IMG/VR virus record: IMGVR_UViG_3300021962_000021
Location: 124,001-188,000 of that record
DNA: 64,000 bases
Direction: 5' to 3' (one strand)
Numbering within the stretch: position 1 is the first letter of the stretch; each line of letters starts with the position of its first letter. The notes under the pieces were generated by a model that worked only from the letters and a program-made list of their open reading frames with translations, had not been told where the DNA came from and made no database searches. Shown here piece by piece: positions 1 to 49,596 of the stretch. A program made the position numbers and the translations under genes.

Positions 1-150
1 AAACTTACAGATGGTATGTATGATGAAGATAACCAAAAGTATTTAGCCGGTCACGATATTAAAAAACAATTGAAAGGTAAATTACAATTTATTATGCATT
101 GGGCAGACCACATGTCTACTGTGATTGAAAGACAAGATGTCAAAATTTAA
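1..150 (+). CDS. C-terminal fragment of a probable HD-domain phosphohydrolase (5'-truncated by window)
   Basis: Frame 1 reads KLTDGMYDEDNQKYL...FIMHWADHMSTVIERQDVKI*, resembling the C-terminal H-x-A-D segment of phage HD proteins. Not in ORF track. Confidence 0.55.
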   Translation, partial: KLTDGMYDEDNQKYLAGHDIKKQLKGKLQFIMHWADHMSTVIERQDVKI

Positions 151-227
151 TGACATTATTTCCTAAAAAAAGTTTGGTATGATAGTTGAATAATAATAGT
201 ATATTGTTTAACAAAAAAATTAAAACT

Positions 228-623
228 ATGTATTACACAAATTTTGACAAAGTATTAGAATCTATTTTTGAAAGTAACTCTCCAGTTTGGGAAAACAAAT
301 CAACAACATTTGTTCCTTCTAAATTTGCAGTTGATGTAAAAGATGATAAAGCACACATTGCTTTAGCAGTGATAGGACATGACCCTAAAAACATTGAAAT
401 CAATTGTTATGAAGATAAAATTGAAGTTACTGCAACAAAAGAGAAAAAAGATTCACAAAACGCAGTTGACCAGTTGATTGGAAACATTAAAGAAACAATC
501 ACATTGGGTAAAGACTTAGATGGTAGAAATGCAAAAGCGGAAATTAAAAATGGTATCTTATCAATCTTAGTAGAAAGAAAAGAAGAATCCAAACCAAAAA
601 AATTAACCTTAAAAGTTGGTTAA
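228..623 (+). CDS. Small heat-shock protein (Hsp20/alpha-crystallin domain)
   Basis: ...AEIKNGILSILVERKEESKPKKLTLKVG is the typical sHSP C-terminal strand and tail. ATG at 228 (taaaactATG) preferred over the track start at 186. Confidence 0.85.
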   Translation: MYYTNFDKVLESIFESNSPVWENKSTTFVPSKFAVDVKDDKAHIALAVIGHDPKNIEINCYEDKIEVTATKEKKDSQNAVDQLIGNIKETITLGKDLDGRNAKAEIKNGILSILVERKEESKPKKLTLKVG

Positions 624-33700: not shown

Positions 33701-35822
33701 AACTGCTACATCTATTTCATCGCCTGTAATCGCAGGTAATGGTGGATATATTTCAGGTTTATTTGTAGTTGGAAGTGGTGGAGCAATAACATTGGATGGT
33801 GTAAATAAAAAAATGTATATTGGAACGGGAACATATAATAATACCAATACATCTTTTTATGTAGATAATTCGGGTCAATTTTCTTTAAAAGATAAATTAA
33901 CTTGGGATGGAACAACATTGACAGTAAATGGTGCCGTTAATATTACAGGAGGTAGTGCTGCCAGTGCAATAACAAATTTAAATAGTGCAACATCTTCATT
34001 AGCAAGTTCGGTATCAACTGCACAATCAACTGCAAATACAGCGGTATCAAATGCTTCAACGGCACAATCTACCGCAAATACTGCAAATACAAAAGCAGAT
34101 ACTGCACAATCACAATTAACAGCAATAGGTTCGCAATCTGGTTCTTGGGTAAATCCATCAAACTACAATTTCGGTGGAAGTGGATTTGCATTGGCAAACG
34201 CAGCACCTGCGGGCTCTGGATTATATTTGGGTGCAAATTATTTGGGGTATTATAATGGTAGTTCTTGGAAATCTTATATGGATAATTCGGGTAACTTTGG
34301 TTTACAAGGTAGTGCGGGTTATTTAACATGGACCGCCGCATCCGATGCATTGGCTATAAAAGGAGATATTACTGCAACGAATATAACAGCAACAAACACA
34401 GGAAATATTGCAGGGTGGACACTAAGTTCCGATTCTTTATCAAAATCAACGGGTAGTTTTAGTTTAAGATTAACAACTTCAGGAAACAAACCAGCTATTG
34501 TTATTAGAGAAACAAATAGTGTGGATTATTTGGATAGATTGAGAATTAATGCCGATTTAACCATTCCTGCAATTAATATTAGTGATACGGGATCGTTGGG
34601 GTATTCTAATAGTTCACAAATACTTGCAACCGTATATGGGTCGGATAATCCGCCATATCAAGATGGTAATACGGGATACGATATGGCTGCATATGGGCAT
34701 ATCAACTATGGATATGGGTATGGTATAATTGGTTTACAATACGCATCTGAAGAGATATTTGTGGAAGCGGACCAGTTTCCAAGCATATCAAATATTATTT
34801 CAGGCCAATGTGATTATCAGGAATCTATTACAGGATATTGGGATTGTTATTTAAGAGTTAGACAATTCCCATCGGCAGTAGATGCACAAAATGAAACAAA
34901 TGTAAATACTTCTTTTGGATTTGGTGGAGAACAATTAATATTGTTAGCTTCAGCGCAATATTATGAATATAGTGGTCAAGTATATACCGATGTTCAAAAT
35001 AAATACGGTGGAACAATTAAAGCACCAGGAGGTGGGGGTATTAACACGGTGGGGACAGCCGTTTGGTATAGAGTTGAAATCATACAATATTATTATGGAT
35101 ATGTGGATGGAACCGCAAATAGTTTTATAAGAATTAGAAGGCCGGCAGGAGATATTATTGTAAAATTTGGTAGAGTTGGTAATGGTTATTCGATATTCTC
35201 TCCGGGCGGTATACAGGTTTATCAGGGTTTTAAAAACTATATGAATGCGGCTGATGTTTCTGCAAAAGCAGCGGGTCTTGATTCGGAGGCAGCTGCGAAC
35301 ATAAACTTTTTTGAAGTAAAAGGAAAATCGGGTATAATTGGTTCATTATCAATATCGGAAGGTTTAACTGGAAAATATAAAAACTTTAAAATACAACATC
35401 CAATACATGAAAACAAATGGTTATATCATACAGCAATAGAAGGACCTAGAGCAGATTTGATGTATAGAGGGACCGTTGAATTGTTAAACGGAGAAGCAAT
35501 GTGTTCAATAGATTCTGCCTCAAAAATGACGGAAGGAACTTTTTATAATCTATCAAGAAATGCACAATTATTTTTACAAAACGAATCAGGATTTGATAGA
35601 ATTAAAGGAAATATTATTAGTGGTTCTATAAATATACAATGTGAAAATACTCAATCAACCGATGTGGTTAGTTGGTTAGTTGTTGCCGAAAGAAATGATC
35701 CAGATATAATAGATTCACCACTATATGATAGAAATAAAAATTATAGAACGGAAAAATATAAAAACGATTTTTTATTACAGGCTAAAAATGAATTAATACA
35801 AAGAATAAGTGGTAGTATATGA
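30741..35822 (+). CDS. Long tail fibre / receptor-binding protein (1693 aa)
   Basis: Globular N-terminus, Ser/Ala coiled-coil stalks, repeated beta modules, C-terminal KNFKIQHP...LYHTAIEGPRADLMYRG chaperone-like segment typical of fibre ends. Confidence 0.75.
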   Translation: MAVLKKTLFPENLEKYSVLIQDTDTNSKYFKITELPDTFTGGKNAFLIQGSEFLVADTIVKIEIKDSQGNIIYHEPGEGIPEYYEGTSKVIAVYIYPDTAFGPCTITILGEVSEYVDANGIKQPVPLQYRDTYNVRWQKEINVNPFLQNNTKIRFYKRPQVEITEILKPVFTITETRIAQGGNTSLYPTDYYVNNTFGKFGDQYILPDDLEYFATLLNGQTFQNNMLGETMSFSSYPTYTPEILEIISADTAKINPPLIESDIVQTVMTTPYSVTYLSGSDRTQSEFTSSYANIKLSQLETFAGDVKRVKVFRRSKGSISDYELVQDILLESTELLITLEGSSRAVQSTGIFDSEILSKYWNTTETLTSTLSNSRLVNGVKLNGGGKFLYTSSLDLTSKTVYELQFDAFYSSSTASDLDIYISGSTTTNSSSIGELKIGTLTGISPTKKFENQIVQFKLDVTEPSASLYFSASQGEWHLSDLSLVVSAETAFSPDSVAFLTSVPTTVPNEIFEFKFEFYDVNNNFVPITILKEKQFSGGTNTVIVLTQLASSSVELSSSIASASLDLTNTISSVSQSISGTVTVNSASAYTTITNVSSSVSGSIFSLSGSVSGTIGSVSASVSGTIGQVSSSVSGTIGSVSASVSGTIGQVSGSISGSIYTLSGSVSGSIANVSSSISSSLSTANSQSLYTVYSASAYLDKFIFTDENGKVKRPPTASVSGLYTGDTHLGFYGGGVWKTYMDNQGDFYLTSSAVNGGFLAWSSTQGRLQIAGDINIQGGNAATTTALSSSLNAVSGAINSATASLSTSVASTTFTTATGLIAKPPTVLVGSTAGLYLGSSYLGYYNGSDWKTYMANNGNFYLSGTGTDSLTWNGSTLTINGAITVTGGNAATSAALTSSLSSTLSSANSTAAGYAANAVTSGSVSAAAAQTAAQLFATSIGTNAVASGSAAASAAQTAAINQAKTDASASINLLANGNWTGGSGTFITATSISSPVIAGNGGYISGLFVVGSGGAITLDGVNKKMYIGTGTYNNTNTSFYVDNSGQFSLKDKLTWDGTTLTVNGAVNITGGSAASAITNLNSATSSLASSVSTAQSTANTAVSNASTAQSTANTANTKADTAQSQLTAIGSQSGSWVNPSNYNFGGSGFALANAAPAGSGLYLGANYLGYYNGSSWKSYMDNSGNFGLQGSAGYLTWTAASDALAIKGDITATNITATNTGNIAGWTLSSDSLSKSTGSFSLRLTTSGNKPAIVIRETNSVDYLDRLRINADLTIPAINISDTGSLGYSNSSQILATVYGSDNPPYQDGNTGYDMAAYGHINYGYGYGIIGLQYASEEIFVEADQFPSISNIISGQCDYQESITGYWDCYLRVRQFPSAVDAQNETNVNTSFGFGGEQLILLASAQYYEYSGQVYTDVQNKYGGTIKAPGGGGINTVGTAVWYRVEIIQYYYGYVDGTANSFIRIRRPAGDIIVKFGRVGNGYSIFSPGGIQVYQGFKNYMNAADVSAKAAGLDSEAAANINFFEVKGKSGIIGSLSISEGLTGKYKNFKIQHPIHENKWLYHTAIEGPRADLMYRGTVELLNGEAMCSIDSASKMTEGTFYNLSRNAQLFLQNESGFDRIKGNIISGSINIQCENTQSTDVVSWLVVAERNDPDIIDSPLYDRNKNYRTEKYKNDFLLQAKNELIQRISGSI
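32529..32792 (+). repeat. Eight 33-bp (11-aa) Ser-rich repeats, e.g. SSSVSGTIGSV / SASVSGTIGQV
   Basis: Hendecad periodicity visible in protein and DNA, including a near-identical 66-bp duplication. Confidence 0.85.
32901..34335 (+). repeat. Three ~40-aa modules GLYxGxxxLG(F/Y)YxGxxWK(T/S)YMxNxG(D/N)F
   Basis: Copies begin at 32901, 33240 and 34218, separated by Ala/Ser/Thr stalks. Confidence 0.85.
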
Positions 35823-38124: not shown

Positions 38125-39005
38125 TTTTAGTGAATGGGTGTTCTTTTTCTGCACCATCCGATGATAATGATAGTTGGGTATCGGGATTATATAATAAAGG
38201 ATTTGACCGTTATAATTATAAAATTCCAAGTAGTATAGAACAAAAATATGCAGTAAGAAATATTGCAGTTGGTGGTTCTTCTAATACTGTAATACGAAGA
38301 AAAACTTTTTGGTATTTAAATGATATATCGCATAAGCATATGCCTGATTATATGATTGTTCAATGGTCCACAATTGATAGATGGGATTATCCAATTTTTG
38401 TTTCAGAAGAAAAAGCAAATACATTTCCAAGAATAAAAGATATATCACCACATTGGGTAAATAAAATAAATTATATGTGTAATGGGACCGATACTATGGG
38501 ATATGCTAAAGATTTTTATGAAAAATATTATTCTTTTTATGGAGCAGTTTTGGATACATTAGAAAACATATATCACACACAACAATATTTGAATACAAAA
38601 GGTATACCATATAAAATGCTTACAATTGGTAATCTTTTCGATATGGATGTTAGTATTGAAAAATTAATAAAATTACAAACGGATAAAACGGGCCAAAGTG
38701 GTAATTATGCAACTTTAAAAACAAATAAAAGTATTTTTGATAAATTAGAACCGTTTGAGAATTCTTGGTATGAATTAGATACACTAAAAGCATTACTAAA
38801 TAAAATAGATTTTAGTAAATTTATATTTACAGATGATGTAAACATATCCGGATTTGGTGGTGGGATTATAGAATGGTTTTTAAATCAAAATGAAATGCTT
38901 AACGGAGGACAGTGGCATCCATCTGGAGAACAACACATTAGGTTTTTTAATGAATTTCTTTGGCCAAAAATAGAAAAAGAAGTAGAACAATATTCCAGAA
39001 AATGA
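38121..39005 (+). CDS. SGNH/GDSL-like protein
   Basis: NGCSFS, AVGGSSN, VQWS, C-terminal WHPSGEQH. Confidence 0.6.
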   Translation: MILVNGCSFSAPSDDNDSWVSGLYNKGFDRYNYKIPSSIEQKYAVRNIAVGGSSNTVIRRKTFWYLNDISHKHMPDYMIVQWSTIDRWDYPIFVSEEKANTFPRIKDISPHWVNKINYMCNGTDTMGYAKDFYEKYYSFYGAVLDTLENIYHTQQYLNTKGIPYKMLTIGNLFDMDVSIEKLIKLQTDKTGQSGNYATLKTNKSIFDKLEPFENSWYELDTLKALLNKIDFSKFIFTDDVNISGFGGGIIEWFLNQNEMLNGGQWHPSGEQHIRFFNEFLWPKIEKEVEQYSRK

Positions 39006-39760
39006 ACTTACTAAATCAAACACTAATTCAAAAATATTTAACAAATAATCATACTATTGATGAAAATGGTAATGTTAAATTGGAGCCTGTAAAGTATCGT
39101 TGGACACATGGTGCAACCGATTTACACTTAGGAGATGGGTTAATGATATATTCACTCATAATGTTTAATAGAGCAAAAATATGCGTTTGTATTGGAACAG
39201 GAGGAGGATTTATACCCCGTCTTATGACGCAAGCTAGAAAAGATTTATGGGAACAAAAAATATTCGAAGGGAATAATCAAACCGAATGGGGTGATATTGG
39301 AACAACTATAATTATAGATGCTTCAAATGGTATTGGAGGGTTTACTGATTGGACAGATGAAAATTCTTTTTTAAGACAACATTTTTCACCACAAGTTATT
39401 TTAGAAACATCAGAAAGGGCCTTTTATGATTATTTTGTAAGACAAGATATTAAGATTGATTATTTGCATATAGATGGCGACCATTCTTATGAAGGTGTTA
39501 AAAAAGATTTTGAATTGTATTCAACCATAATGTCAGAAAATGGAATTATAACAATACACGATACCGACCAAAATTATCATGATACTTTTATCGTTACTGA
39601 AGATGCTAAAAAGGATTTTGATAATTTTGATGGGCCGGCAAAATTTATTAAAGATTTAGAAAATAATTCTGATTGGAATTTGGTAAATTTAAAAAATTTT
39701 CGTATGTTTGATTCTTTAAAACCAACAACAACTGGATTGACAGTTCTGACAAGAAAATAA
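39002..39760 (+). CDS. Class I SAM-dependent methyltransferase (Methyltransf_24-like)
   Basis: CIGTGGG motif I; IDYLHIDGDHSYEGVKKDF..GIITIHD. Start moved from 38960 to the overlapping ATG at 39002. Confidence 0.8.
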   Translation: MNLLNQTLIQKYLTNNHTIDENGNVKLEPVKYRWTHGATDLHLGDGLMIYSLIMFNRAKICVCIGTGGGFIPRLMTQARKDLWEQKIFEGNNQTEWGDIGTTIIIDASNGIGGFTDWTDENSFLRQHFSPQVILETSERAFYDYFVRQDIKIDYLHIDGDHSYEGVKKDFELYSTIMSENGIITIHDTDQNYHDTFIVTEDAKKDFDNFDGPAKFIKDLENNSDWNLVNLKNFRMFDSLKPTTTGLTVLTRK

Positions 39761-39762
39761 AA

Positions 39763-40629
39763 ATGAATAAAAAAATAAGATTAGTTACAGTAACAGGTTC
39801 GAGAACAGATACACTCGAATATATGATTAATCATTACTATGATTTGGTTGACGAGATTTATATTGTTGTTTATGATACAGGAAATGGACAATACGATAAA
39901 GTTAAAGAGATAACTGATAATTACAAAGACAAAATATTTTTATATAGGCACGATGATACTCAAGAATACAATTGGGAGACAGTTACAGCATTATACAATG
40001 AAATAAAAAATTTATATCCAAATGATTGGTGGGTTATTTCAGATGATGATGAATTTCATTTATATTCAAAACCATTAAGAGAAATAATAAATGATTGTGA
40101 TGAAAATAATTGGGATATAGTTAGAGGTGGTTTTATAGATAGAATTGGAGAAGATGGTAAATTTAAAGAAATTGAAAAATTCTCTAAAAAACAAAATATA
40201 TTTAGTCAATTTCCATATGCTGGATTTTTCAGATATCAAATGAGCAAAGCATGTCCTAATAAAATTTGTATTGTAAAGGGTTATATAGAAATAACTCCTG
40301 GTCAACATTATGCAAAGATAGATGGGCATACAACTTGGAGATGGCAAGGTTGGCAACACCCTTTAATTGCACCTGTAGATATTTACAATGTTCAGGTACA
40401 TCATTTTAAATGGGATAAAACAGTTGTTGATAGAATAAAAAAAGTAGCAGATATTAGAAAAGATTATGCATACTCAGATGAATATTTTAAAATGCATCAA
40501 TCATTAAGAAATTCAAATTTTGAATTGAATTTATTATCAGAAGATTATATGTTTGAATATTGTCCAGTTGCATCCTTTGAAAGTTACAAAAAATGGAAAA
40601 AATTATTTAATAAAATTATATCTATATAA
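39763..40629 (+). CDS. GT-A fold glycosyltransferase (GT2/GT92-like)
   Basis: WWVISDDDEFH (DxDE), ACPNKI, VHHFKW. Confidence 0.65.
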   Translation: MNKKIRLVTVTGSRTDTLEYMINHYYDLVDEIYIVVYDTGNGQYDKVKEITDNYKDKIFLYRHDDTQEYNWETVTALYNEIKNLYPNDWWVISDDDEFHLYSKPLREIINDCDENNWDIVRGGFIDRIGEDGKFKEIEKFSKKQNIFSQFPYAGFFRYQMSKACPNKICIVKGYIEITPGQHYAKIDGHTTWRWQGWQHPLIAPVDIYNVQVHHFKWDKTVVDRIKKVADIRKDYAYSDEYFKMHQSLRNSNFELNLLSEDYMFEYCPVASFESYKKWKKLFNKIISI

Positions 40630-40637
40630 AAGGTTAT

Positions 40638-42086
40638 ATGCAAGATAAAAAGTTATCTATTATAGTTCCATATTCTGACCGTAAAGAACAAATGTATACA
40701 TTCATAGGTCATATGGAATATTTCCTTAAAGATAAGGTCAATTACGAAATACATTTCATAGAACAAAAAGATGCAGATGTTTATTTTAATTATGGTAAAC
40801 TATGTAATATTGGGTTTGATATAACCGCAGATACTTCTGATTATTATGTTTTTCAAGATATAGATTTATTACCAAAGCAAGATAATTGTGATTATACATA
40901 TACACATTATCCAACACATCTTGCTACAAATTTAAAACCATATGCAAATTGGATTGGTGGTAGTTTTAAAATAACAAAAGAAGATTTTATCAAAGTAAAT
41001 GGATTTAGTAATGATTATTGGGGTGGTATTTTTCATTGGGAAGATTTTCTATTTAGATTAAATAAACACAATCTATTGCCGGTTAAGAGATTCTTTACTA
41101 AAAATGTTTACAAACCACATAGATTAATTGATGTTGATGAGATAAATAAATTTAGTAAAAAAACAGTTTATCCATTTATTTCCGACCAAAATAATTGTGC
41201 TATTATAAAAGCAAATAAGAAAACTGATTATCTATTTGAAGATTCATTTACGATATCAATGGATATCTGGATAAACGATAATCAATCAACAAACGGGTGT
41301 ATAATTGGTAAGCAAGGATATGATATGGGTATTTTTGTTATGAAAAACCAGGCTATAGCTGTTCAAATCTGGGGAGATGATAATCAATTGTATAATATTT
41401 GGTTCGAACATAAAAACTATACAAATCAATGGATTAATTTAGCATTAAAAGTTGATATGGATTATAGAAAAGCATCTTTATTTGTAGATGGTAAATTGGT
41501 TGGTTGGAGTGAATTGCCAGATACATTAATGGATTTTAGAGGTAAAGATTTGTGGATAGGAAGTATGGCGTTTAGAGATTGTTTCGAAGGTAAAATATCA
41601 AATCTATTGTGCTTTGATTATGCATTAAACGATTCGGAAATAGAAAAAATATATGTTGATGGTTATAAAACAGATGATATTGTCAATACAAATTTTGAAT
41701 CTATAATAGACATAACATTTAGTAAAAAATTTGGAGATTTTTATGTAGATGAATCTAAATCAAAATCGCATGCAAGATTGATATCTACGGGATTACATAA
41801 CCAAATATATTCAGAAGAAATAACTCTTTCATACGAAACAAATATGCCAGAACAATCTTTGGGTAGATTTGAAGTTATGGAAGGAGAAGAAAAATTTTCT
41901 AAATTGGGTGTGTATAATTGGGTTGATAAGGATGGAAATTTTGTAGAAAATGAAAGTATATTTTTCTATGAAATAGCAAACAACACCCTAAACACAGACA
42001 ATTTTGGATTAAATACACTTTCATATGATTTATATGAAACAGAACAATTAAAAGATAATATATTTTTACACTCAATTAAAATTTAA
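40638..42086 (+). CDS. GT7 (beta-1,4-galactosyltransferase-like) with inserted LamG domain, degenerate motifs
   Basis: IVPYSDR, FNYGKLCNIG, FQDID, GFSNDYWG, LamG core, C-terminal FGLNTLSY. Confidence 0.8.
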   Translation: MQDKKLSIIVPYSDRKEQMYTFIGHMEYFLKDKVNYEIHFIEQKDADVYFNYGKLCNIGFDITADTSDYYVFQDIDLLPKQDNCDYTYTHYPTHLATNLKPYANWIGGSFKITKEDFIKVNGFSNDYWGGIFHWEDFLFRLNKHNLLPVKRFFTKNVYKPHRLIDVDEINKFSKKTVYPFISDQNNCAIIKANKKTDYLFEDSFTISMDIWINDNQSTNGCIIGKQGYDMGIFVMKNQAIAVQIWGDDNQLYNIWFEHKNYTNQWINLALKVDMDYRKASLFVDGKLVGWSELPDTLMDFRGKDLWIGSMAFRDCFEGKISNLLCFDYALNDSEIEKIYVDGYKTDDIVNTNFESIIDITFSKKFGDFYVDESKSKSHARLISTGLHNQIYSEEITLSYETNMPEQSLGRFEVMEGEEKFSKLGVYNWVDKDGNFVENESIFFYEIANNTLNTDNFGLNTLSYDLYETEQLKDNIFLHSIKI

Positions 42087-42088
42087 AA

Positions 42089-42388
42089 ATGGCAAAAATT
42101 AAGTTACAAGAAGTAGAAACTCCAGAACAAAATTTAGAATCAGTTGTATTGGAAACAAGAAAAGTTAAAGCATTGGAAAAGATAGCAAATTCTTTGGATG
42201 CACTTACTATTTGGTTCGAAGAAATTGATAAGAAAGAATGGGGTGAAAGATTGGCATGGTATTTGTATGAATGGCATACAATGGCTAAAGCAAATTTTAG
42301 TGGGGAAGTTCCAACAACACAGGAAGAACAACAAACTCCACCACCACCAAGAAAAGTTAGACCAAAAAAAGATATAGAAAAAGTTTAA
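42089..42388 (+). CDS. Small hypothetical protein between GT7 paralogues
   Basis: 99 aa, tight spacing, W-rich helix LTIWFEEIDKKEWGERLAWYLYEW. Confidence 0.7.
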   Translation: MAKIKLQEVETPEQNLESVVLETRKVKALEKIANSLDALTIWFEEIDKKEWGERLAWYLYEWHTMAKANFSGEVPTTQEEQQTPPPPRKVRPKKDIEKV

Positions 42389-42391
42389 TAA

Positions 42392-43822
42392 ATGAAATTA
42401 GGAATCATCGTTCCATATAGAAATAGAGAGACTCATTTAAATAGGTTTATATCAGAAACAAAAAGTTATTTAAAATCTAAAAAAATAGATTCCGAAGTAA
42501 TAATAGTCGAACAATCCGATGATAAACCTTTTAATAGAGGAAAACTATTAAATGTTGGATATATAAAAGCAAAAGAGTTAGGTTGTGATTATATTGTATT
42601 TCACGATGTGGATATGATACCAATTGATGTTGATTATTCTTATTCGGAAGTTCCACTCCATCTTGCAACAAAATTTGAATTGGAATATGAAAAAGCTAAA
42701 AATTTAGAATTCGATGATTATTTTGGCGGAGTAACAATGATGTCAAATAAAACATTTGAAAAAATAAATGGTTATTCGAATTTATATTGGGGATGGGGAT
42801 TTGAGGATGATGACCTTCTATTTAGATGTGCAGAAAAGGGAATTATTTTAGATAGAAAAGTAATAGGAAAAAAAGAAGTTAAAAAAATATATGGTTTATA
42901 CTTCAATGGTAAAGATTCTCATATAAAGATTCCAAAAAAAGATTTATTTGATTTTAATAGGGATGCATCAATATTGATATCTTTTAAACCCGATGAAGTC
43001 ATATCTAATCCTATGAAAGAGTATGATGAATATACCGTATTCTCTATACCAGGGTATGATACTAATATATCTTATAATTCATTTAGAAGATATAAATGTG
43101 ATTTTTGGAATTCAAAAAATGAAAATTTATCTATTAATTCGGAAATACTTACAAATCACTTTACGCAAATTTGTATTACAATAAGTGTAAAAAATAAAGA
43201 AATTTCATTTTATAAAGATGGTGAATTGGTTGAATCAAAAAAATTAATAGGCGATTTCAAAAACTATTCAGATGAAGAATATTTTTATTTGGGCGTTGGC
43301 TCTCCTGAAAGATTAGATAACAACAATTATTTTTATGGTATAATTTCTGAATTTGCTATTTTTGATAAAGTATTAGATGAAAGAGAAATTGAAATACTTT
43401 CGGAAAATACATTAGAAAATTCTCTATTAGAAAATTTTAGAGCTTATAAATCTTCCGATAATTTAAAATTATATTACGATTTTAAATTCTACAAAAATAA
43501 AAAATTGATAGATTTATCAGGTAACGGAAATGATGGAGAAATTATCAATTCACATTTTATTAAATCAAACCAGCAATTGGGTAAAGAAATGATGGTTCCT
43601 TATAGAAGAGATAGTCTTTTCAAATTATTATCACACAAACCAAATAGTTGGAATGGTAAGAGTTGGGTTCATAGAGAAACCAGAATAAATCAATTGAGGT
43701 TTTTGAATGAAGTTAAAAAAAGATTATATAATATAGAATTAGATGGTTTAAATAGTTGTATGTATCAAATAATCGGAGAAGCAAAAAAAGAAAATATACA
43801 TCATTTATCAGTATTGTTATAG
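42392..43822 (+). CDS. GT7 glycosyltransferase with inserted LamG domain
   Basis: IVPYRNR, PFNRGKLLNVG, FHDVD, GYSNLYWGWGFEDDD, LamG core, DGLNSCMY. Confidence 0.9.
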   Translation: MKLGIIVPYRNRETHLNRFISETKSYLKSKKIDSEVIIVEQSDDKPFNRGKLLNVGYIKAKELGCDYIVFHDVDMIPIDVDYSYSEVPLHLATKFELEYEKAKNLEFDDYFGGVTMMSNKTFEKINGYSNLYWGWGFEDDDLLFRCAEKGIILDRKVIGKKEVKKIYGLYFNGKDSHIKIPKKDLFDFNRDASILISFKPDEVISNPMKEYDEYTVFSIPGYDTNISYNSFRRYKCDFWNSKNENLSINSEILTNHFTQICITISVKNKEISFYKDGELVESKKLIGDFKNYSDEEYFYLGVGSPERLDNNNYFYGIISEFAIFDKVLDEREIEILSENTLENSLLENFRAYKSSDNLKLYYDFKFYKNKKLIDLSGNGNDGEIINSHFIKSNQQLGKEMMVPYRRDSLFKLLSHKPNSWNGKSWVHRETRINQLRFLNEVKKRLYNIELDGLNSCMYQIIGEAKKENIHHLSVLL

Positions 43823-43823
43823 T

Positions 43824-45281
43824 ATGAAATTAGGAGTTTGTGTTCCATATAGAAATCGACAAGAACATATGAATAAGTTTGTTCCTCATGTATCTAAATT
43901 TTTAGAAGATAGGGGAATTGAGCATACAATATATTTGGCACACCAATGTGATGAAAAATTATTTAACAGAGGTTTGATGAAAAACATTGCAGCCAAATAT
44001 GCATTTGATGATGGTTGTGATTATATAGTTTGGCATGATATTGATATGGTGCCAGAAGATGATAGTTGTGATTATTCATATAATCCAGATGCACCAAAGC
44101 ATTTGGCAGTTAGGATATCACAATCTGATTACGGATTAAAATATCAGGAATACTTTGGTGGTGCAGTGTTGTTTACAAAAGAACAAGTGATAAAAACCAA
44201 CGGATATTCTAATGGTTATTGGGATTGGGGTATGGAAGATGATGACTTATTTTGGAGATGTGTTTTAGAAGGATATGCCGATAAAAAAACATTAAATTAT
44301 AATAAAACAAAAACGGTTGGAGTATTTAATGGTAAATCATCATTTATAAAAATACCAAACCAACCTGATGATAAATTAAGACAATCTTTGAATTCTTGTC
44401 ATACCGTTTCTGTTTTAGTTAAAGCAGACCAGCAAATAGAAAAAGTTCCTATTTGGTTAATCGGTGATGATAAAAGAAAGTTTGTAGAATACCCTATAAT
44501 AAGAAAACCAGGATTTGATTGGGGATTATCTTTTAACAATAGTAGAGCATATACTGCAATGCTTTGGAATAATCATAGAGAACACATCTACCAATGGATA
44601 AAAAGATATGAAAATGAATGGAGTTGGGTTACTATGGTAGTGGATTCTAAAAGAAAAAGAATGCACTTATATATCAATGGTAGAGAAAGTGATGCAAGAA
44701 ATGGAATGGGAACACAATCACCAATCAGATATCAATATGATTTAAAAAGATATGGTAGTGAACCATTTTACATTGGACATACACCATCTGTTGCTGGATT
44801 TGAACCAAATGCATATTTTAAGGGCGAAATAGCGGATATAAAAATATGGAATAGAGCATTAGATGAAACCGAAGTTGAATTATTAAATAAACAATATTCA
44901 ACAAACGGATTAGTTTTACATTACAATTTTGATGATATAGAAAATGGATATCTAATAGACCAATCCGAATTAAATGATGGTTTTATAAATGATGTAAAAT
45001 TTGAAGAAAGAGATATTATAATACCTGATGTTGTATTACCACATAGACGAGATGGTAAATTCTTTTGTTTACCACATCAAACGGAAGGATTGATAAATGT
45101 TGGTGGAATAGAAAAGTGGGCAAAGGGTGAAACAACAGCAGCAAATGAAAGGAGATATGTATTAGAAATGCAACAAGGCAAAATAGATTATAAAAAAGAT
45201 GGTATAAATAGTATGAAATACACATACTTAAATACCCAAACAATATTTGAAAAACACAAAATGATTAACGTTCATTGTTAA
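43824..45281 (+). CDS. GT7 glycosyltransferase with inserted LamG domain
   Basis: VPYRNR, FNRGLMKN, WHDID, YWDWGMEDDD, FKGEIADIKIWNRAL (LamG), DGINSMKY. Confidence 0.9.
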   Translation: MKLGVCVPYRNRQEHMNKFVPHVSKFLEDRGIEHTIYLAHQCDEKLFNRGLMKNIAAKYAFDDGCDYIVWHDIDMVPEDDSCDYSYNPDAPKHLAVRISQSDYGLKYQEYFGGAVLFTKEQVIKTNGYSNGYWDWGMEDDDLFWRCVLEGYADKKTLNYNKTKTVGVFNGKSSFIKIPNQPDDKLRQSLNSCHTVSVLVKADQQIEKVPIWLIGDDKRKFVEYPIIRKPGFDWGLSFNNSRAYTAMLWNNHREHIYQWIKRYENEWSWVTMVVDSKRKRMHLYINGRESDARNGMGTQSPIRYQYDLKRYGSEPFYIGHTPSVAGFEPNAYFKGEIADIKIWNRALDETEVELLNKQYSTNGLVLHYNFDDIENGYLIDQSELNDGFINDVKFEERDIIIPDVVLPHRRDGKFFCLPHQTEGLINVGGIEKWAKGETTAANERRYVLEMQQGKIDYKKDGINSMKYTYLNTQTIFEKHKMINVHC

Positions 45282-45285
45282 AATT

Positions 45286-46701
45286 ATGGCAGAGCAAAAA
45301 ACATACAAAGAAAATCCAATTTATTTAAGAGTAAAAGATGAACTTAATTCAGTTGGTCCAGGAATGTGTTTAGCAAAGTGGACACAAGTAACACTACAAT
45401 TGCAAAATGGACATAATCATTCATGTCACCATCCAAGAACACATAAAATTTCGGAACAAGAGATTGCACGAAACCCATCGGCACTTCATAATACGAGATA
45501 TAAAAAACTTCGTAGAAAAGAAATGTTACAAGGTAGTAGACCTGTTGAGTGTGATTATTGTTGGGGAGTAGAAGATAATTCTGACCGTTTTTCTGATAGA
45601 ATTTTTAAATCAGGAGAAAGTTGGTCTTATCCATTTATGAAAGAAATTACAGAATCAGATTGGAGAGATGATTACAATCCAAAATATGTAGAAGTAGCAT
45701 TCTCAAATGCATGTAATTTTAAATGTTCATATTGTGGACCCGCTTTCAGTTCAAAATGGGTAGAAGAAATAGAACAATATGGACATTATCCAACTCTTGA
45801 TAATTTCAACTCAACTGAGTGGATGAAAGTAGAAGATAAATTTCCAATTCCTGCTAGAGAACATAATCCTTATGTAGAAGCATTTTGGAAATGGTGGCCT
45901 GATTTATATAGAGATTTACACACCTTTAGAATTACAGGTGGAGAACCCCTAATGGCAAAAGATACTTGGAAAGTATTAGATTACATCATTGAACAAGAAA
46001 ACCCAAATACGGAATTAAAATTAGCGTTTAATTCGAATTTAGGTGTTCCTACCGAATTGGTTAAAAAATTTATTGAGAAGATAAAAAGAATTGAAGATGA
46101 AGGTAGAGCAAAAGAAGTTGTAATATTTACATCAGTTGATACTTGGGGAGAACAGGCAGAATATATTAGAACGGGATTAGAATTTAATCGTTTTTGGGAC
46201 CATGTTAATATGATATTGACAGAATGTCCTAGAGTTATTATTACATTTATGTCTACATACAACGCATTGAGTGTATTTAACTATGAACAATTAATTCACA
46301 ATGTATATACCTTAAAAGACCAATACGCATCATCTGATAGATATTGGAACTCAGCAGTATTTTTAGATTCATCATATTTAAGATATCCTTTACACCAAAC
46401 TGTGCAAGTTCTTCCTTATGATTTTTCTAAATATATTTTAGACCAATCTAAATTAATTACATATTATGCGGCACCATCATTTAGTCCTGAACACATTGGA
46501 TATAGTGATGTTGAAGTTCAAAAAGTAAAACGTATTTACGATTGGATGTTGGCACCACAAGATGCAACACAGCAAATGAAAAATAGATATAGTTTTTATC
46601 AGTATTTTTCAAATCACGATAAACGTAGAGGAACTAATTTTGTAAAAACATTCCCAGAATTGGAAGAGTTTTATAACTTTTGTAAAACAATAAAAATATG
46701 A
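45286..46701 (+). CDS. Radical SAM protein with N-terminal Cys/His auxiliary-cluster domain
   Basis: CNFKCSYC (CxxxCxxC), ITGGEP; N-terminal CLAKW...HSCHH...CDYCW. Confidence 0.9.
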   Translation: MAEQKTYKENPIYLRVKDELNSVGPGMCLAKWTQVTLQLQNGHNHSCHHPRTHKISEQEIARNPSALHNTRYKKLRRKEMLQGSRPVECDYCWGVEDNSDRFSDRIFKSGESWSYPFMKEITESDWRDDYNPKYVEVAFSNACNFKCSYCGPAFSSKWVEEIEQYGHYPTLDNFNSTEWMKVEDKFPIPAREHNPYVEAFWKWWPDLYRDLHTFRITGGEPLMAKDTWKVLDYIIEQENPNTELKLAFNSNLGVPTELVKKFIEKIKRIEDEGRAKEVVIFTSVDTWGEQAEYIRTGLEFNRFWDHVNMILTECPRVIITFMSTYNALSVFNYEQLIHNVYTLKDQYASSDRYWNSAVFLDSSYLRYPLHQTVQVLPYDFSKYILDQSKLITYYAAPSFSPEHIGYSDVEVQKVKRIYDWMLAPQDATQQMKNRYSFYQYFSNHDKRRGTNFVKTFPELEEFYNFCKTIKI

Positions 46702-47447
46702 GTTTAAAAGTAGATAAGGATAATATATTTTTTATTTTACCTGAAAGTAGGTATTCTGTATCAAATAGAATTGATAAATGGATGGAAGAAGATTTTTCTT
46801 TACATCTATCCGCAAAAGTATTTTTAGAAGATTTGGATATTAATCAATCTTTTATGTTTGCAAGAAATGGAATGCATTCTGGGATATCGGCATTCAAAGA
46901 CCAATTTGATAATGTAAATGTTTCATTTAGTTATTGGTTTAGAACACCAAATGGAGAATCTGTTGTTAAGCAAGTATTTCATGGTTTACTTCCCGAAGAA
47001 GTTGGTGAATTTAATGAATACTCAATGATATGTGACCAGTTTGAAGATAGAAAGATAGATTGTTATTTTAATGGAAAATTGGTTGGAACCATACATTTTG
47101 GAGATGATGAAAAACAATCATATGAACATGCTTTTTATTGGTTTGGTTGTGGGAGTATGATAGGACCCGAAGAGCATAGGGGATATGGTAAGTTTGAATA
47201 CAAATTGTGTTTTCTATTAGATAAGAAATTAAAAATAGTTGAATTACAAGATATAGCAGATAACTACACAGATAAATACAGCCATACGGTTTTTAATGAT
47301 TTAAAGAAATTAAACTATGATTTTGCATTAAGACCGCATTTTGCATTTTTTTGTGATTTTAATCATCACAACCGATATAAAGTTTGGGATTTATCATTTA
47401 GCGGAAACTATCCACAATTTTATATAGAACACAATATATACTTTTAA
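46698..47447 (+). CDS. Stand-alone LamG/concanavalin-A-like domain protein
   Basis: IDCYFNGKLVG, WFGCG, terminal WDLSFSGN, like the LamG inserts of the GT7 genes. Confidence 0.45.
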   Translation: MSLKVDKDNIFFILPESRYSVSNRIDKWMEEDFSLHLSAKVFLEDLDINQSFMFARNGMHSGISAFKDQFDNVNVSFSYWFRTPNGESVVKQVFHGLLPEEVGEFNEYSMICDQFEDRKIDCYFNGKLVGTIHFGDDEKQSYEHAFYWFGCGSMIGPEEHRGYGKFEYKLCFLLDKKLKIVELQDIADNYTDKYSHTVFNDLKKLNYDFALRPHFAFFCDFNHHNRYKVWDLSFSGNYPQFYIEHNIYF

Positions 47448-47448
47448 T

Positions 47449-48420
47449 ATGAAGATTTTAATAACAGGTGGTGCCGGATATTTGGGTTCGGTTATTGTTG
47501 GTAAAATGTTAGAAGAAGGATATGATGTGGTTGTATTAGATAAATTATTATTTAATCAAACTTCGTTATTACAATATACTTCTAATTCAAAATTCAAATT
47601 TATTTACGGAGATGTTCGTAATGAGGTGTTATTGGAAAAACTATGTAATGAAGTTGATGTTATTATTCCATTAGCAGCAATTGTAGGATTTCCAGCATGT
47701 GCCGCAGACCCAAAATTAGCAAGAGAGATAAATTTTAATCAAATTGTAAATATAGTTAAATTTACAAATGGTAAAGATAAAAAAATTCTTTATCCAAATA
47801 CTAATAGTGGATATGGACTTGGGCAAGGACAAACGGAGTGTGATGAAGAATCGCCGTTGAATCCAATATCCGTTTACGGACAAACTAAATGTGAAGCTGA
47901 GAACTTTTTAAGAACATCTACGGATGCAATTATTTTCAGATTAGCAACTGTATTCGGAGTATCACCTAGAATGAGAACCGACCTATTGGTGAACGATTTT
48001 ACATATAAAGCAATTACAGACAAATACATTGTTGTGTTTGAAAAAAATTTTAAAAGAAACTATATACACATTGAAGATGTTGCAAATGTATTTCTTTTTA
48101 TGTTAAAAAATTATGATAAATATAAAAATGAAGTTTTTAATATAGGATTGAGTTCTGCAAATCTTTCAAAAAAAGAACTTTTGGAAAAAATACAATCTCA
48201 TGTAAAAGATTTTGCAATATCATATAATGATTATTACGAAGACCCGGATAAAAGAGATTATATAGTTTCCAATACAAAAGTAGAAGCTACGGGTTGGAAG
48301 CCAGAATGGGATTTGGATAGAGGAATAAAACAACTTATAATGGCATATCAAATGATTGTTCCAAAAATGGGAGCAGAATTTAGAAACGGATTTCCTTTAG
48401 GTTACGCAAATCAAACATAG
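47449..48420 (+). CDS. NAD-dependent NDP-sugar epimerase/dehydratase (extended SDR)
   Basis: TGGAGYLGS, LAAIVG, YGQTK (YxxxK), RLATVFG. Confidence 0.9.
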   Translation: MKILITGGAGYLGSVIVGKMLEEGYDVVVLDKLLFNQTSLLQYTSNSKFKFIYGDVRNEVLLEKLCNEVDVIIPLAAIVGFPACAADPKLAREINFNQIVNIVKFTNGKDKKILYPNTNSGYGLGQGQTECDEESPLNPISVYGQTKCEAENFLRTSTDAIIFRLATVFGVSPRMRTDLLVNDFTYKAITDKYIVVFEKNFKRNYIHIEDVANVFLFMLKNYDKYKNEVFNIGLSSANLSKKELLEKIQSHVKDFAISYNDYYEDPDKRDYIVSNTKVEATGWKPEWDLDRGIKQLIMAYQMIVPKMGAEFRNGFPLGYANQT

Positions 48421-48421
48421 T

Positions 48422-48967
48422 ATGAGTAATAAGTGGGATGAATTTATAGAAACACCATCTAAGAAATTTGGATATCAAGTTCCATCGTTTCAACCATCGG
48501 TGTTTAGAGAATATAGAGGTGAAATATTTACAACCTTTCATTCAGAAGAACATCCTGTAATGAGGCATATTCATTATGATAAAGAAGAAATTTCAATTCA
48601 CGGAAGATTTTCTCGTTCATACAAAGGTGTCCTAAGAGGATTACATTGGGATAAAAAGACATGGAAATTAGTTCAGGCAGTAGTAGGTGATATCTACTTA
48701 GTTGTTTTGGATATGAGAGAAACATCCGATACCTATGGTGAGTGGGAATCGTATATAATTTCAGAAAGATTGAGAAACCAGGTTTTAATTCCACCAGGAT
48801 TCGCAAACGGACACTACGCATTAACTGATTGTATGTTTCACTATAACTTATTTTACAAAGATGGTTATGTTGATGCAAACGAACAATATGTTGTGAAATG
48901 GAATGACCCGGAGTTTCAAATGGAATGGCCGACCGATAAACCTATATTACAAAAAAGAGATAGATAA
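48422..48967 (+). CDS. rmlC: dTDP-4-dehydrorhamnose 3,5-epimerase (RmlC-like cupin)
   Basis: FREYRG, SYKGVLRGLHW, KLVQAVVGDIYLVVLDMR, IPPGFANGH, KWNDP. Confidence 0.88.
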   Translation: MSNKWDEFIETPSKKFGYQVPSFQPSVFREYRGEIFTTFHSEEHPVMRHIHYDKEEISIHGRFSRSYKGVLRGLHWDKKTWKLVQAVVGDIYLVVLDMRETSDTYGEWESYIISERLRNQVLIPPGFANGHYALTDCMFHYNLFYKDGYVDANEQYVVKWNDPEFQMEWPTDKPILQKRDR

Positions 48968-49596
48968 TGATAAAAAATTTAGAACAATATTCAATAGTTA
49001 GACCTATTGAACAAACTGCAGAAACATTAATTGATTTTGAAAATCTAATAGTAAAACATTGGGAAGAAGGAAAAATTAGAGGACCTATCCATCTTTCAAA
49101 CGGAAACGAAGAACAACTAATAGAAATTTTCAGTAGAATAAAAACTACCGATTGGGTATTTTCAACTTGGCGTTCTCATTACCATGCACTATTAAAGGGA
49201 GTTTGTCCCGTTTGGATTGAAGAAGAAATTCTAAAAGGAAAATCTATTACTCTTTGTAATATTGATGAAAAGTTTTATTCATCTGCAATAGTTGGTGGGA
49301 CATTATCCATTGCATTAGGCGTCGCAATGGGAATTAAAGAAAGGGGTAGTGATGAAAAAGTATTTGTATTTATAGGTGACATGTCTTTCGAAAGTGGTAT
49401 CTTCTATGAAGTTCACAAATATTCTAGAAACTTTAATTTACCAATTGTATTTGTTGTGGAAGATAATGGCGTTTCAACATACACACCGACCGAAGCAACT
49501 TGGAATGTAAAAAGAGAAATTCCATCGGATGTTATTCATTACACTTATAAATCAAAATATCCACATTACGGAAGTGGTAAGTGGGTAGTATTTTAA
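48967..49596 (+). CDS. ThDP-dependent enzyme, short PDH E1-alpha-like subunit
   Basis: GPIHLSNGNE, STWRSHYHAL, ThDP motif GDMSFESG...VVEDN; only 209 aa. Confidence 0.85.
   Translation: MIKNLEQYSIVRPIEQTAETLIDFENLIVKHWEEGKIRGPIHLSNGNEEQLIEIFSRIKTTDWVFSTWRSHYHALLKGVCPVWIEEEILKGKSITLCNIDEKFYSSAIVGGTLSIALGVAMGIKERGSDEKVFVFIGDMSFESGIFYEVHKYSRNFNLPIVFVVEDNGVSTYTPTEATWNVKREIPSDVIHYTYKSKYPHYGSGKWVVF

What the first reader, a model, noticed from the sequence alone, without database searches (positions are those of the whole stretch)
40638..45281. Three tandem GT7 galactosyltransferase-like genes, each with a LamG lectin-like domain inserted inside the catalytic domain
Seen: in all three the GT7 sequence stops shortly after the WG.GxEDDD helix, roughly 200 aa of LamG-like sequence follow (FYKDGEL, FKGEIADIKIWNRAL, DLSGNGN), then GT7 resumes and ends with (D/F)G(L/I)N(S/T)xxY. 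Known: in beta4GalT1 this position precedes the flexible His-bearing loop that forms the acceptor site. Inference: the insert could select the acceptor (protein or growing chain) or drive processive or hetero-oligomeric polymerisation. GT7 is mostly eukaryotic and this architecture is unfamiliar to me.
Basis: partly seen in the sequence, partly recalled or inferred. Interest (0 to 1): 0.72.

Follow-up and report, generated by a model that had tools for sequence, protein, structure and literature searches.

The report
Phage GT7 glycosyltransferases with inserted LamG domain
A large uncultivated aquatic phage carries three neighbouring sugar-transferring enzymes of the galactosyltransferase (GT7) type, each split by a lectin-like domain next to the acceptor-binding loop; the design is real, common in uncultivated phages and unstudied, and one of the three copies has lost its catalytic residues.

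Summary
ORFs 40638-42086 (A), 42392-43822 (B) and 43824-45281 (C) each score above Pfam thresholds for Glyco_transf_7N, Glyco_transf_7C and Laminin_G_3. AlphaFold models of B (pLDDT 91.5) and A (88.5) superpose on beta4GalT1/beta4GalT7 at Z about 25 across the whole chain. The middle ~240 residues match LamG/pentraxin sandwiches at Z 18-22.

A compact 223-aa homologue maps the insert: its residue 153 aligns to B 156 and its residue 152 to B 405. That places the insert about ten residues before the metal-binding His that starts the lid loop.

B and C keep DxD, the E-D catalytic pair and the His in every orthologue examined. A has lost the E-D pair and the His but evolves under purifying selection (dN/dS about 0.1), so it is probably a non-catalytic partner.

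The window belongs to a 238-kb myovirus record. The genes sit in a conserved cassette (methyltransferase, GT2-like, [A], B, C, twitch radical-SAM) inside a sugar-nucleotide island that follows a Ser/Thr-rich fibre gene. None of the island's transferases has a membrane segment.

The architecture occurs in more than 2,700 metagenomic proteins, nearly all viral, but in no cultured phage, PHROG or paper that I found. I read it as a new variant of a known kind. The acceptor is unknown.

The parts
40638..42086 (+). Copy A (482 aa): GT7 fold with a LamG insert, catalytically degenerate. Approximate parts: GT-N aa 1-155, LamG aa 176-399 (nt 41163-41834), GT-C aa 404-482 (nt 41847-42083).
   Evidence: Pfam. 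AF2 pLDDT 88.5. VIA Z 25.3 to beta4GalT7 over model 1..482, and Z 22.6 to the PAPP-A LamG domain over 176..399. Relative to residues invariant in B and C, A has R10S, R49Y, E138H, D139W and no His415 equivalent. dN/dS 0.09-0.12.
42089..42388 (+). 99-aa ORF between A and B, no family match.
   Evidence: No Pfam, NCBIfam or PHROG hit. A homologue is present in 29 of 80 related viral loci, median identity 65%.
42392..43822 (+). Copy B (476 aa): GT-N aa 1-156 (nt 42392-42859), LamG insert aa 157-404 (nt 42860-43603), GT-C aa 405-476 (nt 43604-43819). Full catalytic set: D72-V-D74, W135, E138, D139, H415.
   Evidence: The catalytic residues are invariant in 62 B-type sequences.
43824..45281 (+). 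Copy C (485 aa): same layout, with the insert at about aa 155-407 (nt 44286-45044). Full catalytic set: D72-I-D74, E138, D139, H418.
   Evidence: Pfam. Alignments A1 and A5. Residues invariant or nearly so in 63 C-type sequences. dN/dS 0.05-0.11.
39002..39760 (+). Methyltransf_24-type SAM methyltransferase, a conserved cassette member. An alternative TTG start lies at 38960.
   Evidence: Pfam E 1.4e-10. Homologue in 76 of 80 related loci.
39763..40629 (+). GT2-like protein (Glyco_tranf_2_4, just under the Pfam cut-off), a conserved cassette member.
   Evidence: Pfam 27.0 bits against a cut-off of 27.5. Homologue in 78 of 80 loci.
45286..46701 (+). Radical-SAM protein with an N-terminal twitch domain and a CxxxCxxC motif, a conserved cassette member directly after C.
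   Evidence: NCBIfam NF033640, E 1.5e-105, 353 bits against a cut-off of 170. Homologue in 75 of 80 loci.
46698..47447 (+). Stand-alone 249-aa LamG-like protein homologous to the inserts.
   Evidence: hhalign against the B profile: probability 91.7%, E 8e-7, aligned to B columns 257-384. Weak hits of equivalent ~240-aa ORFs to the family HMM in other loci. Homologue in 31 of 80 loci.
47449..49596 (+). Sugar-nucleotide tailoring genes: an SDR epimerase/dehydratase, an RmlC-like 3,5-epimerase and a TPP-dependent E1-like protein.
   Evidence: Pfam. Homologues in 32-47 of 80 loci at 79-84% median identity.
30741..35822 (+). 1,693-aa Ser/Thr/Gly/Ala-rich fibre-like protein upstream of the island. 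It is a candidate acceptor by inference only.
   Evidence: The translation shows long Ser-rich 11-residue-type repeats and repeated GLYLG..YLGYYNGS.WK.YM motifs. Homologue in 17 of 80 loci within the 8-kb flank.

Best explanation
**What it is.** A, B and C are soluble cytoplasmic paralogues of the CAZy GT7 (beta4Gal-T-like) family of inverting, metal-dependent GT-A glycosyltransferases. They are encoded by a large aquatic myovirus. Each carries a ~240-aa LamG/pentraxin-type beta-sandwich spliced into the strand that leads to the Met/His hinge of the mobile lid loop. This is the loop that in beta4GalT1 closes over the donor and creates the acceptor site.

**How it most likely works.**
- B and C are active enzymes that add successive sugars.
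- The donor-binding N-terminal half is conserved. The LamG insert and the C-terminal acceptor-side segment diverge faster.
- The insert most likely acts as a built-in acceptor-recognition module. It would play in cis the role that alpha-lactalbumin plays in trans for beta4GalT1, or that the ricin-type lectin domain plays for ppGalNAc-transferases.
- A has lost the catalytic acid pair and the His but is still under purifying selection. It most likely serves as a non-catalytic binding or scaffolding partner.

**Likely pathway role.** The trio works within a conserved cassette (methyltransferase, GT2-like, [A], B, C, twitch radical-SAM, often a free LamG protein) fed by adjacent NDP-sugar tailoring genes. 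It would assemble a modified glycan in the cytoplasm. My preferred acceptor is a virion fibre or surface protein. A lipid-linked host glycan is the main alternative.

**Shown versus inferred.** Shown: fold, insertion point, residue conservation, cassette conservation, selection. Inferred: enzymatic activity, donor, the role of the insert, the acceptor.
For: **Architecture and fold.**
- Pfam hits for all three domains.
- AF2 models of B and A.
- VIA Z 25.6 and 25.3 to beta4GalT1/T7 across the whole chain, and Z 18-22 to LamG/pentraxin domains for the insert.

**Insertion point.**
- Compact homologues lack the insert.
- P0177 residues 153 and 152 flank it.
- B 154-161 aligns to bovine 333-342.

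**Active site.**
- DxD, E138, D139 and H415 are invariant in 62 B-type and 63 C-type sequences; A-type copies are degenerate.
- The catalytic Asp corresponds to the D211N position of the Drosophila beta4GalT7 entries among the hits.
- Tyr110 of B aligns to the donor-selecting Tyr289.

**Evolution.**
- Mean orthologue identity for GT-N / LamG / GT-C is 0.60 / 0.40 / 0.42 in B and 0.73 / 0.46 / 0.60 in C.
- dN/dS is 0.05-0.13 for all three copies.

**Context.**
- The B-C pair is present in nearly all of the 80 IMG/VR loci (one B-only locus, two cut by the contig end); a third, upstream copy is present in roughly half to two thirds.
- Cassette conservation is 75-78 of 80 loci.
- No hydrophobic segment occurs in any of the island's transferases.
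- NDP-sugar genes lie adjacent, and a Ser-rich fibre gene lies upstream.
- Virion glycosylation by phage-encoded transferases is documented in mycobacteriophages (Freeman et al. 2023, as cited in PMC12619734).
Against: - There are no biochemical data for any member.
- I could not read model coordinates, so the position of the LamG ligand face relative to the catalytic Asp is unknown.
- The B+C complex prediction gave no interface (uninformative).
- The link to the fibre protein rests on proximity alone. Only 17 of 80 loci show that fibre within 8 kb.
- A distant homologue (28% identity) sits in what looks like a bacterial ABC-transporter polysaccharide locus. This favours a glycan-chain acceptor over a protein acceptor.
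- The post-insert segment alone has no significant sequence match to beta4GalT1. Its assignment rests on structure prediction and on the compact homologues.
Confidence: 0.5

Rival explanations
1. Host-surface remodelling. The cassette extends or alters a host undecaprenyl-linked O-antigen or capsule chain in the cytoplasm, and the LamG inserts bind the growing polysaccharide. The effect would be to change the cell surface during infection, for example to exclude competing phages.
For: - A single GT7-LamG gene lies between an ABC-2 permease plus ABC ATPase and GT4, GT2, FkbM and radical-SAM genes in a Spirochaetaceae MAG of 3.4 Mb.
- Compact homologues are auto-named 'glycosyltransferase involved in capsule biosynthesis'.
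- The pelagimyophage literature interprets transferases in the tail-fibre hypervariable region this way (PMC7029224).
- LamG_3 domains are common in carbohydrate-active proteins.
Against: - The phage island encodes no initiating phosphoglycosyl transferase, flippase, polymerase or ABC exporter, and no membrane segment in its transferases.
- The MAG contig was not shown to be chromosomal (inconclusive).
- Surface conversion is best documented for temperate phages.
Confidence: 0.3
2. Oligomerisation or processivity module. The LamG inserts mainly hold A, B and C together as a hetero-oligomeric polymerase that alternates sugars, rather than recognising the acceptor.
For: - B and C are adjacent in nearly all of the 80 loci, often with overlapping stop and start codons.
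- A is a conserved pseudo-enzyme under purifying selection, as seen for non-catalytic partners in other transferase complexes.
Against: - The complex prediction for B+C gave ipSAE 0.00 in both runs (the tool says this is not evidence against).
- The inserts are the fastest-evolving part, which fits better with changing ligands than with a fixed interface.
- A stand-alone LamG paralogue also exists.
Confidence: 0.12
3. DNA glycosylation. The enzymes decorate hydroxymethylated bases of phage DNA, as in T-even phages.
For: Phage transferases often do this, with diverse glycans (Pyle et al. 2024, as cited in PMC12619734). The genome has myovirus (T4-type) baseplate and SbcCD-type genes.
Against: - No thymidylate-synthase or dCMP-hydroxymethylase family gene occurs anywhere in the 238-kb genome.
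- Known DNA glucosyltransferases of T-even phages are GT-B enzymes (my knowledge).
- A lectin-type insert and a location among fibre genes do not fit.
Confidence: 0.03

Closest known systems
Animal beta-1,4-galactosyltransferases 1 and 7 (CAZy GT7; PDB 1tvy, 1o0r, 4irq, 4m4k)
   Same: GT-A fold (Z 25, rmsd 2.1-2.5 over 203-212 residues). 31-36% identity over the first ~155 residues. DxD, WGxGxEDDD with the catalytic Asp, the donor-pocket Arg228 and Tyr289 equivalents, and the hinge His. A C-terminal DGLNS..Y strand.
   Different: - No membrane anchor or stem.
- Lacks the first ~50 residues of the animal catalytic domain (the alignment starts at residue 180).
- A 248-aa LamG domain is inserted about 10 residues before the hinge His.
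- Encoded by a phage, in 2-3 tandem paralogues, one of them degenerate.
Compact 200-250-aa GT7-like proteins of bacteria and phages (e.g. P0176, P0177, P0180; the genome-scan matches in Azospirillum and others cover only the N-terminal ~155 residues)
   Same: 45-52% identical to B over the N-terminal 155 residues, with the same C-terminal RR.G.F.SL.H ... DGL..L.Y segment. These are the likely ancestral form.
   Different: They have no insert. Residues 152 and 153 are contiguous where B carries 248 extra residues. They are uncharacterised, with automatic names only.
Polypeptide GalNAc-transferases (GT27) with a C-terminal ricin-type lectin domain, and the alpha-lactalbumin/beta4GalT1 lactose synthase complex
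   Same: Functional analogy only, from my own knowledge: a carbohydrate- or protein-binding module next to a GT-A lid loop redirects acceptor choice. Alpha-lactalbumin complexes are among the structural hits (1nf5, 1yro, 4l41).
   Different: A different lectin fold (beta-trefoil versus LamG), appended or supplied in trans rather than inserted. No homology of the specifier part.
Tail-fibre hypervariable 'host recognition cluster' of marine T4-like myophages, and virion glycosylation in mycobacteriophages
   Same: Transferases, radical-SAM cassettes and sugar genes embedded among tail-fibre genes (PMC7029224). Phage-encoded transferases that glycosylate capsid and tail proteins (cited).
   Different: Those reports do not describe GT7-LamG proteins (GT8 is named as the commonest family). 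The nearest cultured relatives by baseplate protein, Microcystis phage Mel-JY01 and Flavobacterium phage immuto, have no homologue.

Membership tests
CAZy GT7 / Pfam Glyco_transf_7N + 7C (beta4Gal-T-like inverting GT-A) | Sequence match to both Pfam halves above the gathering score | tested here: met
   All three proteins: 7N at 55.7-74.3 bits (cut-off 27) and 7C at 29.8-68.3 bits (cut-off 23). phmmer to beta4GalT1, E 2e-28.
CAZy GT7 / Pfam Glyco_transf_7N + 7C (beta4Gal-T-like inverting GT-A) | Complete GT-A fold including the C-terminal strands after the lid loop | tested here: met
   Predicted models of B and A align to beta4GalT1/T7 from model residue 1 to the last residue, Z 25.6 and 25.3. 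C was not modelled; its alignment shows the same segments.
CAZy GT7 / Pfam Glyco_transf_7N + 7C (beta4Gal-T-like inverting GT-A) | DxD metal/donor motif | tested here: met
   A has DID, B has DVD and C has DID. Invariant in B-type and C-type sequences, and present in 24-26 of 28 A-type sequences.
CAZy GT7 / Pfam Glyco_transf_7N + 7C (beta4Gal-T-like inverting GT-A) | Catalytic Glu-Asp pair in WGxGxEDDD and the hinge His (bovine E317, D318, H347) | tested here: met
   Met for B and C: E138, D139 and H415/H418 are invariant or nearly so. NOT met for copy A of this window, which has H, W and no His. A has the GT7 fold but not its catalytic signature.
CAZy GT7 / Pfam Glyco_transf_7N + 7C (beta4Gal-T-like inverting GT-A) | Inverting transfer from a UDP-sugar forming a beta-1,4 linkage | not testable with these tools
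   Requires an enzyme assay. Retention of the Tyr289 equivalent (Y110) hints at a non-N-acetylated donor by analogy only (plus my own knowledge).
LamG / concanavalin A-like lectin-glucanase superfamily (Pfam Laminin_G_3) | Profile match above the gathering score | tested here: met
   49.0-51.5 bits against a cut-off of 27.6 in all three proteins.
LamG / concanavalin A-like lectin-glucanase superfamily (Pfam Laminin_G_3) | Two-sheet jelly-roll sandwich fold | tested here: met
   Predicted. Z 22 to the PAPP-A LamG module, Z 22 to BACOVA_03559 (4dqa) and Z 18-20 to pentraxins, with about 200 residues aligned in sequential order.
LamG / concanavalin A-like lectin-glucanase superfamily (Pfam Laminin_G_3) | Ligand (carbohydrate, Ca2+ or protein) binding on the sandwich rim | not tested
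   Invariant Asp212 and Asp374 and near-invariant Asp363 lie in the insert, but no coordinates or ligand modelling were available.

The most novel reading that the evidence does not exclude
A, B and C, together with the free LamG protein and the methyltransferase, GT2-like and radical-SAM partners, form a phage-specific cytoplasmic protein-glycosylation machine. It coats the Ser/Thr-rich tail fibre or another virion surface protein with an unusual methylated or branched glycan. The LamG inserts would read the protein or the nascent chain, and the pseudo-enzyme A would act as the substrate adaptor. This would make virion glycosylation a widespread trait of large aquatic phages.
Probability: 0.15. 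Interest if true: 0.8.

Novelty: new variant of a known kind. Interest (0 to 1): 0.55.

Why it matters
**For glycobiology.** GT7 enzymes are textbook models for how a mobile lid loop and an external specifier protein (alpha-lactalbumin) set acceptor specificity. Here nature has spliced a lectin-type domain directly at the hinge of that loop. It has also kept the design in thousands of phage genes, in active/active/inactive paralogue sets. This offers a compact, soluble, prokaryote-expressible system to test how an inserted binding domain reprograms a GT-A enzyme.

**For phage biology.** The cassette points to a conserved but unstudied glycan-building pathway in the host-recognition region of abundant uncultivated aquatic phages.

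Tried and rejected
- **Circular permutation of the LamG domain.** I suspected this because the DLSGNGN-type motif lies at the end of the insert. I rejected it: about 200 residues align in sequential order to PAPP-A and pentraxin domains, and the tail pieces alone hit no Pfam model.
- **B+C heterodimer prediction.** ipSAE 0.00, controls not run, so no conclusion.
- **Single origin of the insert.** A tree of the 155-aa N-domain from 151 sequences was unresolved. Supports were low, and some long proteins were not recognised by my B-derived LamG HMM.
- **Sequence proof that the post-insert piece matches beta4GalT1.** The single sequence found nothing. A profile gave only E 0.46 to residues 244-279 of the chain. 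The case therefore rests on structure prediction and on compact homologues.
- **Cultured phages.** blastn and tblastn with B and C found nothing among 50,697 records. PHROGs has no family for these proteins.
- **Literature.** Five searches found no description of the architecture. A sixth was rejected as malformed.
- **Cyanophage and DNA-modification leads.** The genome has no psbA and no ThyA or hydroxymethylase family gene.
- **Whether the Spirochaetaceae contig is chromosomal.** The EF-Tu-family search found no marker on that contig, so this is inconclusive.
Full report
**Setting.** The window is bases 124001-188000 of a 238,219-bp IMG/VR virus record that CheckV rates complete. It is AT-rich (27-35% G+C), and every sizeable gene is on the + strand. 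It encodes myovirus (T4-type) baseplate wedge proteins and a fused SbcD-SbcC nuclease. The nearest cultured relatives by baseplate protein are Microcystis phage Mel-JY01 (43% identity) and Flavobacterium phage vB_FspM_immuto (40%). The genome has no psbA gene and no thymidylate-synthase or hydroxymethylase family gene.

**The observation.** A conserved 99-aa ORF separates A from B. All three score above Pfam gathering thresholds for Glyco_transf_7N, Glyco_transf_7C and Laminin_G_3. The 7C match stops at profile position 43-65 of 78, and the LamG match follows it. The paralogues are 26-34% identical to one another.

**Is it truly an insertion into the catalytic domain?** Yes, on three lines of evidence.
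- *Compact homologues.* A search of 1.84 billion cluster representatives with B residues 1-165 found 6,356 relatives. Many are compact 200-250-aa proteins that are 45-52% identical over that region. Aligned with B, they run straight from '...G...DRR' into 'G.F.SL.H ... DGL..L.Y'.
- *Exact junction.* BLASTP of the 223-aa P0177 against B gives residues 3-153 = B 2-156 (E 2e-49) and residues 152-211 = B 405-465. About 248 residues (B 157-404) are therefore inserted at a single peptide bond.
- *Structure prediction.* The AlphaFold2 model of B (pLDDT 91.5, pTM 0.84) aligns to bovine beta4GalT1 at Z 25.6 and rmsd 2.5 A over 212 residues. The alignment runs from model residue 1 to 476 against chain residues 180-398. 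Model residues ~164-402 match the LamG module of PAPP-A (Z 22), the Bacteroides carbohydrate-binding protein 4dqa (Z 22) and pentraxins (Z 18-20). The model of A (pLDDT 88.5) behaves identically.

In the phmmer alignment to beta4GalT1, B 154-161 pairs with bovine 333-342. The invariant His after the insert (B H415) then corresponds by position to His347. The post-insert piece alone is too diverged for a significant sequence match to beta4GalT1.

**Catalytic residues.** I collected 198 family members (153 of them distinct) from 80 related IMG/VR loci.
- B-type and C-type sequences keep the following invariant or nearly so: the DxD motif (D72, D74), Trp135, Glu138, Asp139 (the equivalent of the catalytic base, D318 in beta4GalT1 and D211 in Drosophila beta4GalT7) and the hinge His.
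- The equivalents of the donor-pocket residues Arg228 (B R49) and Tyr289 (B Y110) are also kept.
- A-type copies always replace the Arg by Tyr and have lost one or more catalytic motifs. In this window's subclade, Glu-Asp has become His-Trp and the His is gone. Other subclades lose the DxD or only the Glu.
- A is nevertheless not decaying. dN/dS against two orthologues is 0.09-0.12, comparable to B (0.12-0.13) and C (0.05-0.11), although dS is near 1.

I conclude that B and C are probably active enzymes and that A is a conserved pseudo-enzyme or an enzyme with different chemistry.

**Evolutionary pattern.** Among orthologues, the donor-binding N-terminal half is the most conserved. The LamG insert and the C-terminal acceptor-side segment diverge faster. 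Mean identities are 0.60 / 0.40 / 0.42 in B and 0.73 / 0.46 / 0.60 in C. This fits a fixed donor chemistry with changing acceptors or ligands.

**Context.**
- The B-C pair is present, usually abutting, in nearly all of the 80 loci (one locus has B alone and two are cut by the contig end). An upstream third copy is present in roughly half to two thirds.
- Homologues of the Methyltransf_24 gene (39002-39760) occur in 76 of 80 loci. The figures are 78 of 80 for the GT2-like gene (39763-40629) and 75 of 80 for the radical-SAM gene (45286-46701). The radical-SAM protein belongs to NCBIfam NF033640 (N-terminal twitch domain), E 1.5e-105.
- The next ORF (46698-47447) is a free-standing LamG-like protein homologous to the inserts (hhalign probability 91.7%).
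- Downstream lie three SDR epimerase/dehydratases, an RmlC-like epimerase, TPP-dependent E1-like pieces, a second radical-SAM gene, a HAD phosphatase, a GDSL-like protein and a 1,294-aa protein with a cytidylyltransferase domain.
- Upstream lies a 1,693-aa Ser/Thr/Gly/Ala-rich fibre-like protein, preceded by a prolyl-hydroxylase-type 2OG oxygenase.
- No transferase in the island has a hydrophobic segment.
- The layout resembles the tail-fibre 'host recognition cluster' rich in transferases and radical-SAM cassettes described for marine myophages (PMC7029224).

**Distribution and prior knowledge.**
- The word-indexed search returned 2,714 proteins at E <= 0.001, a capped count. The best 120 nearly all carry the same three Pfam domains, and their only names are 'hypothetical protein' or an automatic 'beta-1,4-galactosyltransferase 1'.
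- ESM Atlas holds at least 20 clusters with this architecture, all assigned to viruses (Uroviricota).
- AlphaFold DB clusters hold a single full-length match, A0A2E0BNI5, at TM 0.72. The viral structure library BFVD has none.
- None of 50,697 deposited phage genomes has a match. PHROGs has no family for it.
- In 185,579 species genomes, full-length matches are confined to a handful of MAG contigs. Most look like binned phage. One example is a 93-kb 'Anaeromicropila' contig carrying the same cassette.
- One distant homologue (28% identity) in a Spirochaetaceae MAG lies between ABC-2 permease and ATPase genes and GT4, GT2, FkbM and radical-SAM genes. This suggests a bacterial ABC-transporter-type polysaccharide locus, although chromosomal origin was not proven.
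- Five literature searches found no description of the architecture.

**Mechanism.** I favour a built-in acceptor-recognition role for the insert. The reasons are its position at the lid-loop hinge, its faster divergence, the presence of a free paralogue, and analogy with alpha-lactalbumin/beta4GalT1 and with the lectin domains of ppGalNAc-transferases (analogies from my own knowledge).

The acceptor is open. A soluble cytoplasmic pathway with no export genes, next to fibre genes, suggests virion protein glycosylation. This has precedent in mycobacteriophages (cited). The Spirochaetaceae locus and the published reading of such islands instead suggest a lipid-linked surface glycan.

Oligomerisation could not be assessed. 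DNA glycosylation is unlikely, because the genome lacks a hydroxymethylase.

**Verdict.** The structural interpretation is right. The functional proposals remain hypotheses. This is a new, abundant, uncharacterised variant of a well-known enzyme family, of moderate to good interest.

Noticed in passing
window 46698-47447 (+): A free-standing 249-aa LamG-like protein homologous to the inserts of A, B and C (hhalign probability 91.7%). Its start overlaps the stop of the radical-SAM gene, and equivalent ~240-aa ORFs recur in related loci.
   Followed up: partly
window 45286-46701 (+): A radical-SAM protein with an N-terminal twitch domain (NF033640, E 1.5e-105) is conserved directly after copy C in 75 of 80 loci. 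Its substrate is unknown. A second, different radical-SAM gene lies at 49598-50803.
   Followed up: partly
window 42089-42388 (+): A 99-aa ORF with a Pro-rich basic tail lies between A and B. It has no family match and is conserved in 29 of 80 loci at 65% median identity.
   Followed up: no
window 29723-30448 and 30741-35822 (+): A prolyl-hydroxylase-type 2OG-Fe(II) oxygenase lies immediately upstream of a 1,693-aa fibre-like protein with long Ser-rich repeats. Hydroxylation followed by glycosylation of the fibre would be a testable idea.
   Followed up: no
window 48967-49596 and 57321-57863 (+): Separate E1-alpha-like (TPP-binding) and transketolase-pyrimidine-like ORFs lie 8 kb apart among SDR, RmlC-like, HAD and GDSL genes. 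This may be a branched-chain or unusual deoxysugar pathway.
   Followed up: no
window 58017-61901 (+): A 1,294-aa protein has an N-terminal cytidylyltransferase-like domain. The remaining ~1,100 residues have no family match.
   Followed up: no
window 26562-29711 (+): A single 1,049-aa ORF combines SbcD-like (aa 5-323) and SbcC-like (aa 321-1048) parts, which are usually two genes (gp47 and gp46 in T4).
   Followed up: no
L091 5971-7473 (Spirochaetaceae MAG, genome G001 contig C1): A single 500-aa GT7-LamG protein (28% identical to B) lies inside an ABC-2 permease / ABC ATPase / GT4 / GT2 / FkbM / radical-SAM cluster. It is possibly the only clearly cellular example of the architecture.
   Followed up: partly
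proteins P0121, P0123, P0124, P0153: Other GT7 domain arrangements exist in metagenomes. Examples are a tandem of two complete compact GT7 units in 450 aa, and proteins with two or three GT7 N-domains, one of them 1,686 aa long.
   Followed up: no
window 5099-6793 (+): A NodU/CmcH-type carbamoyltransferase (PHROG 1601, E 5e-120) lies upstream of the baseplate genes.
   Followed up: no
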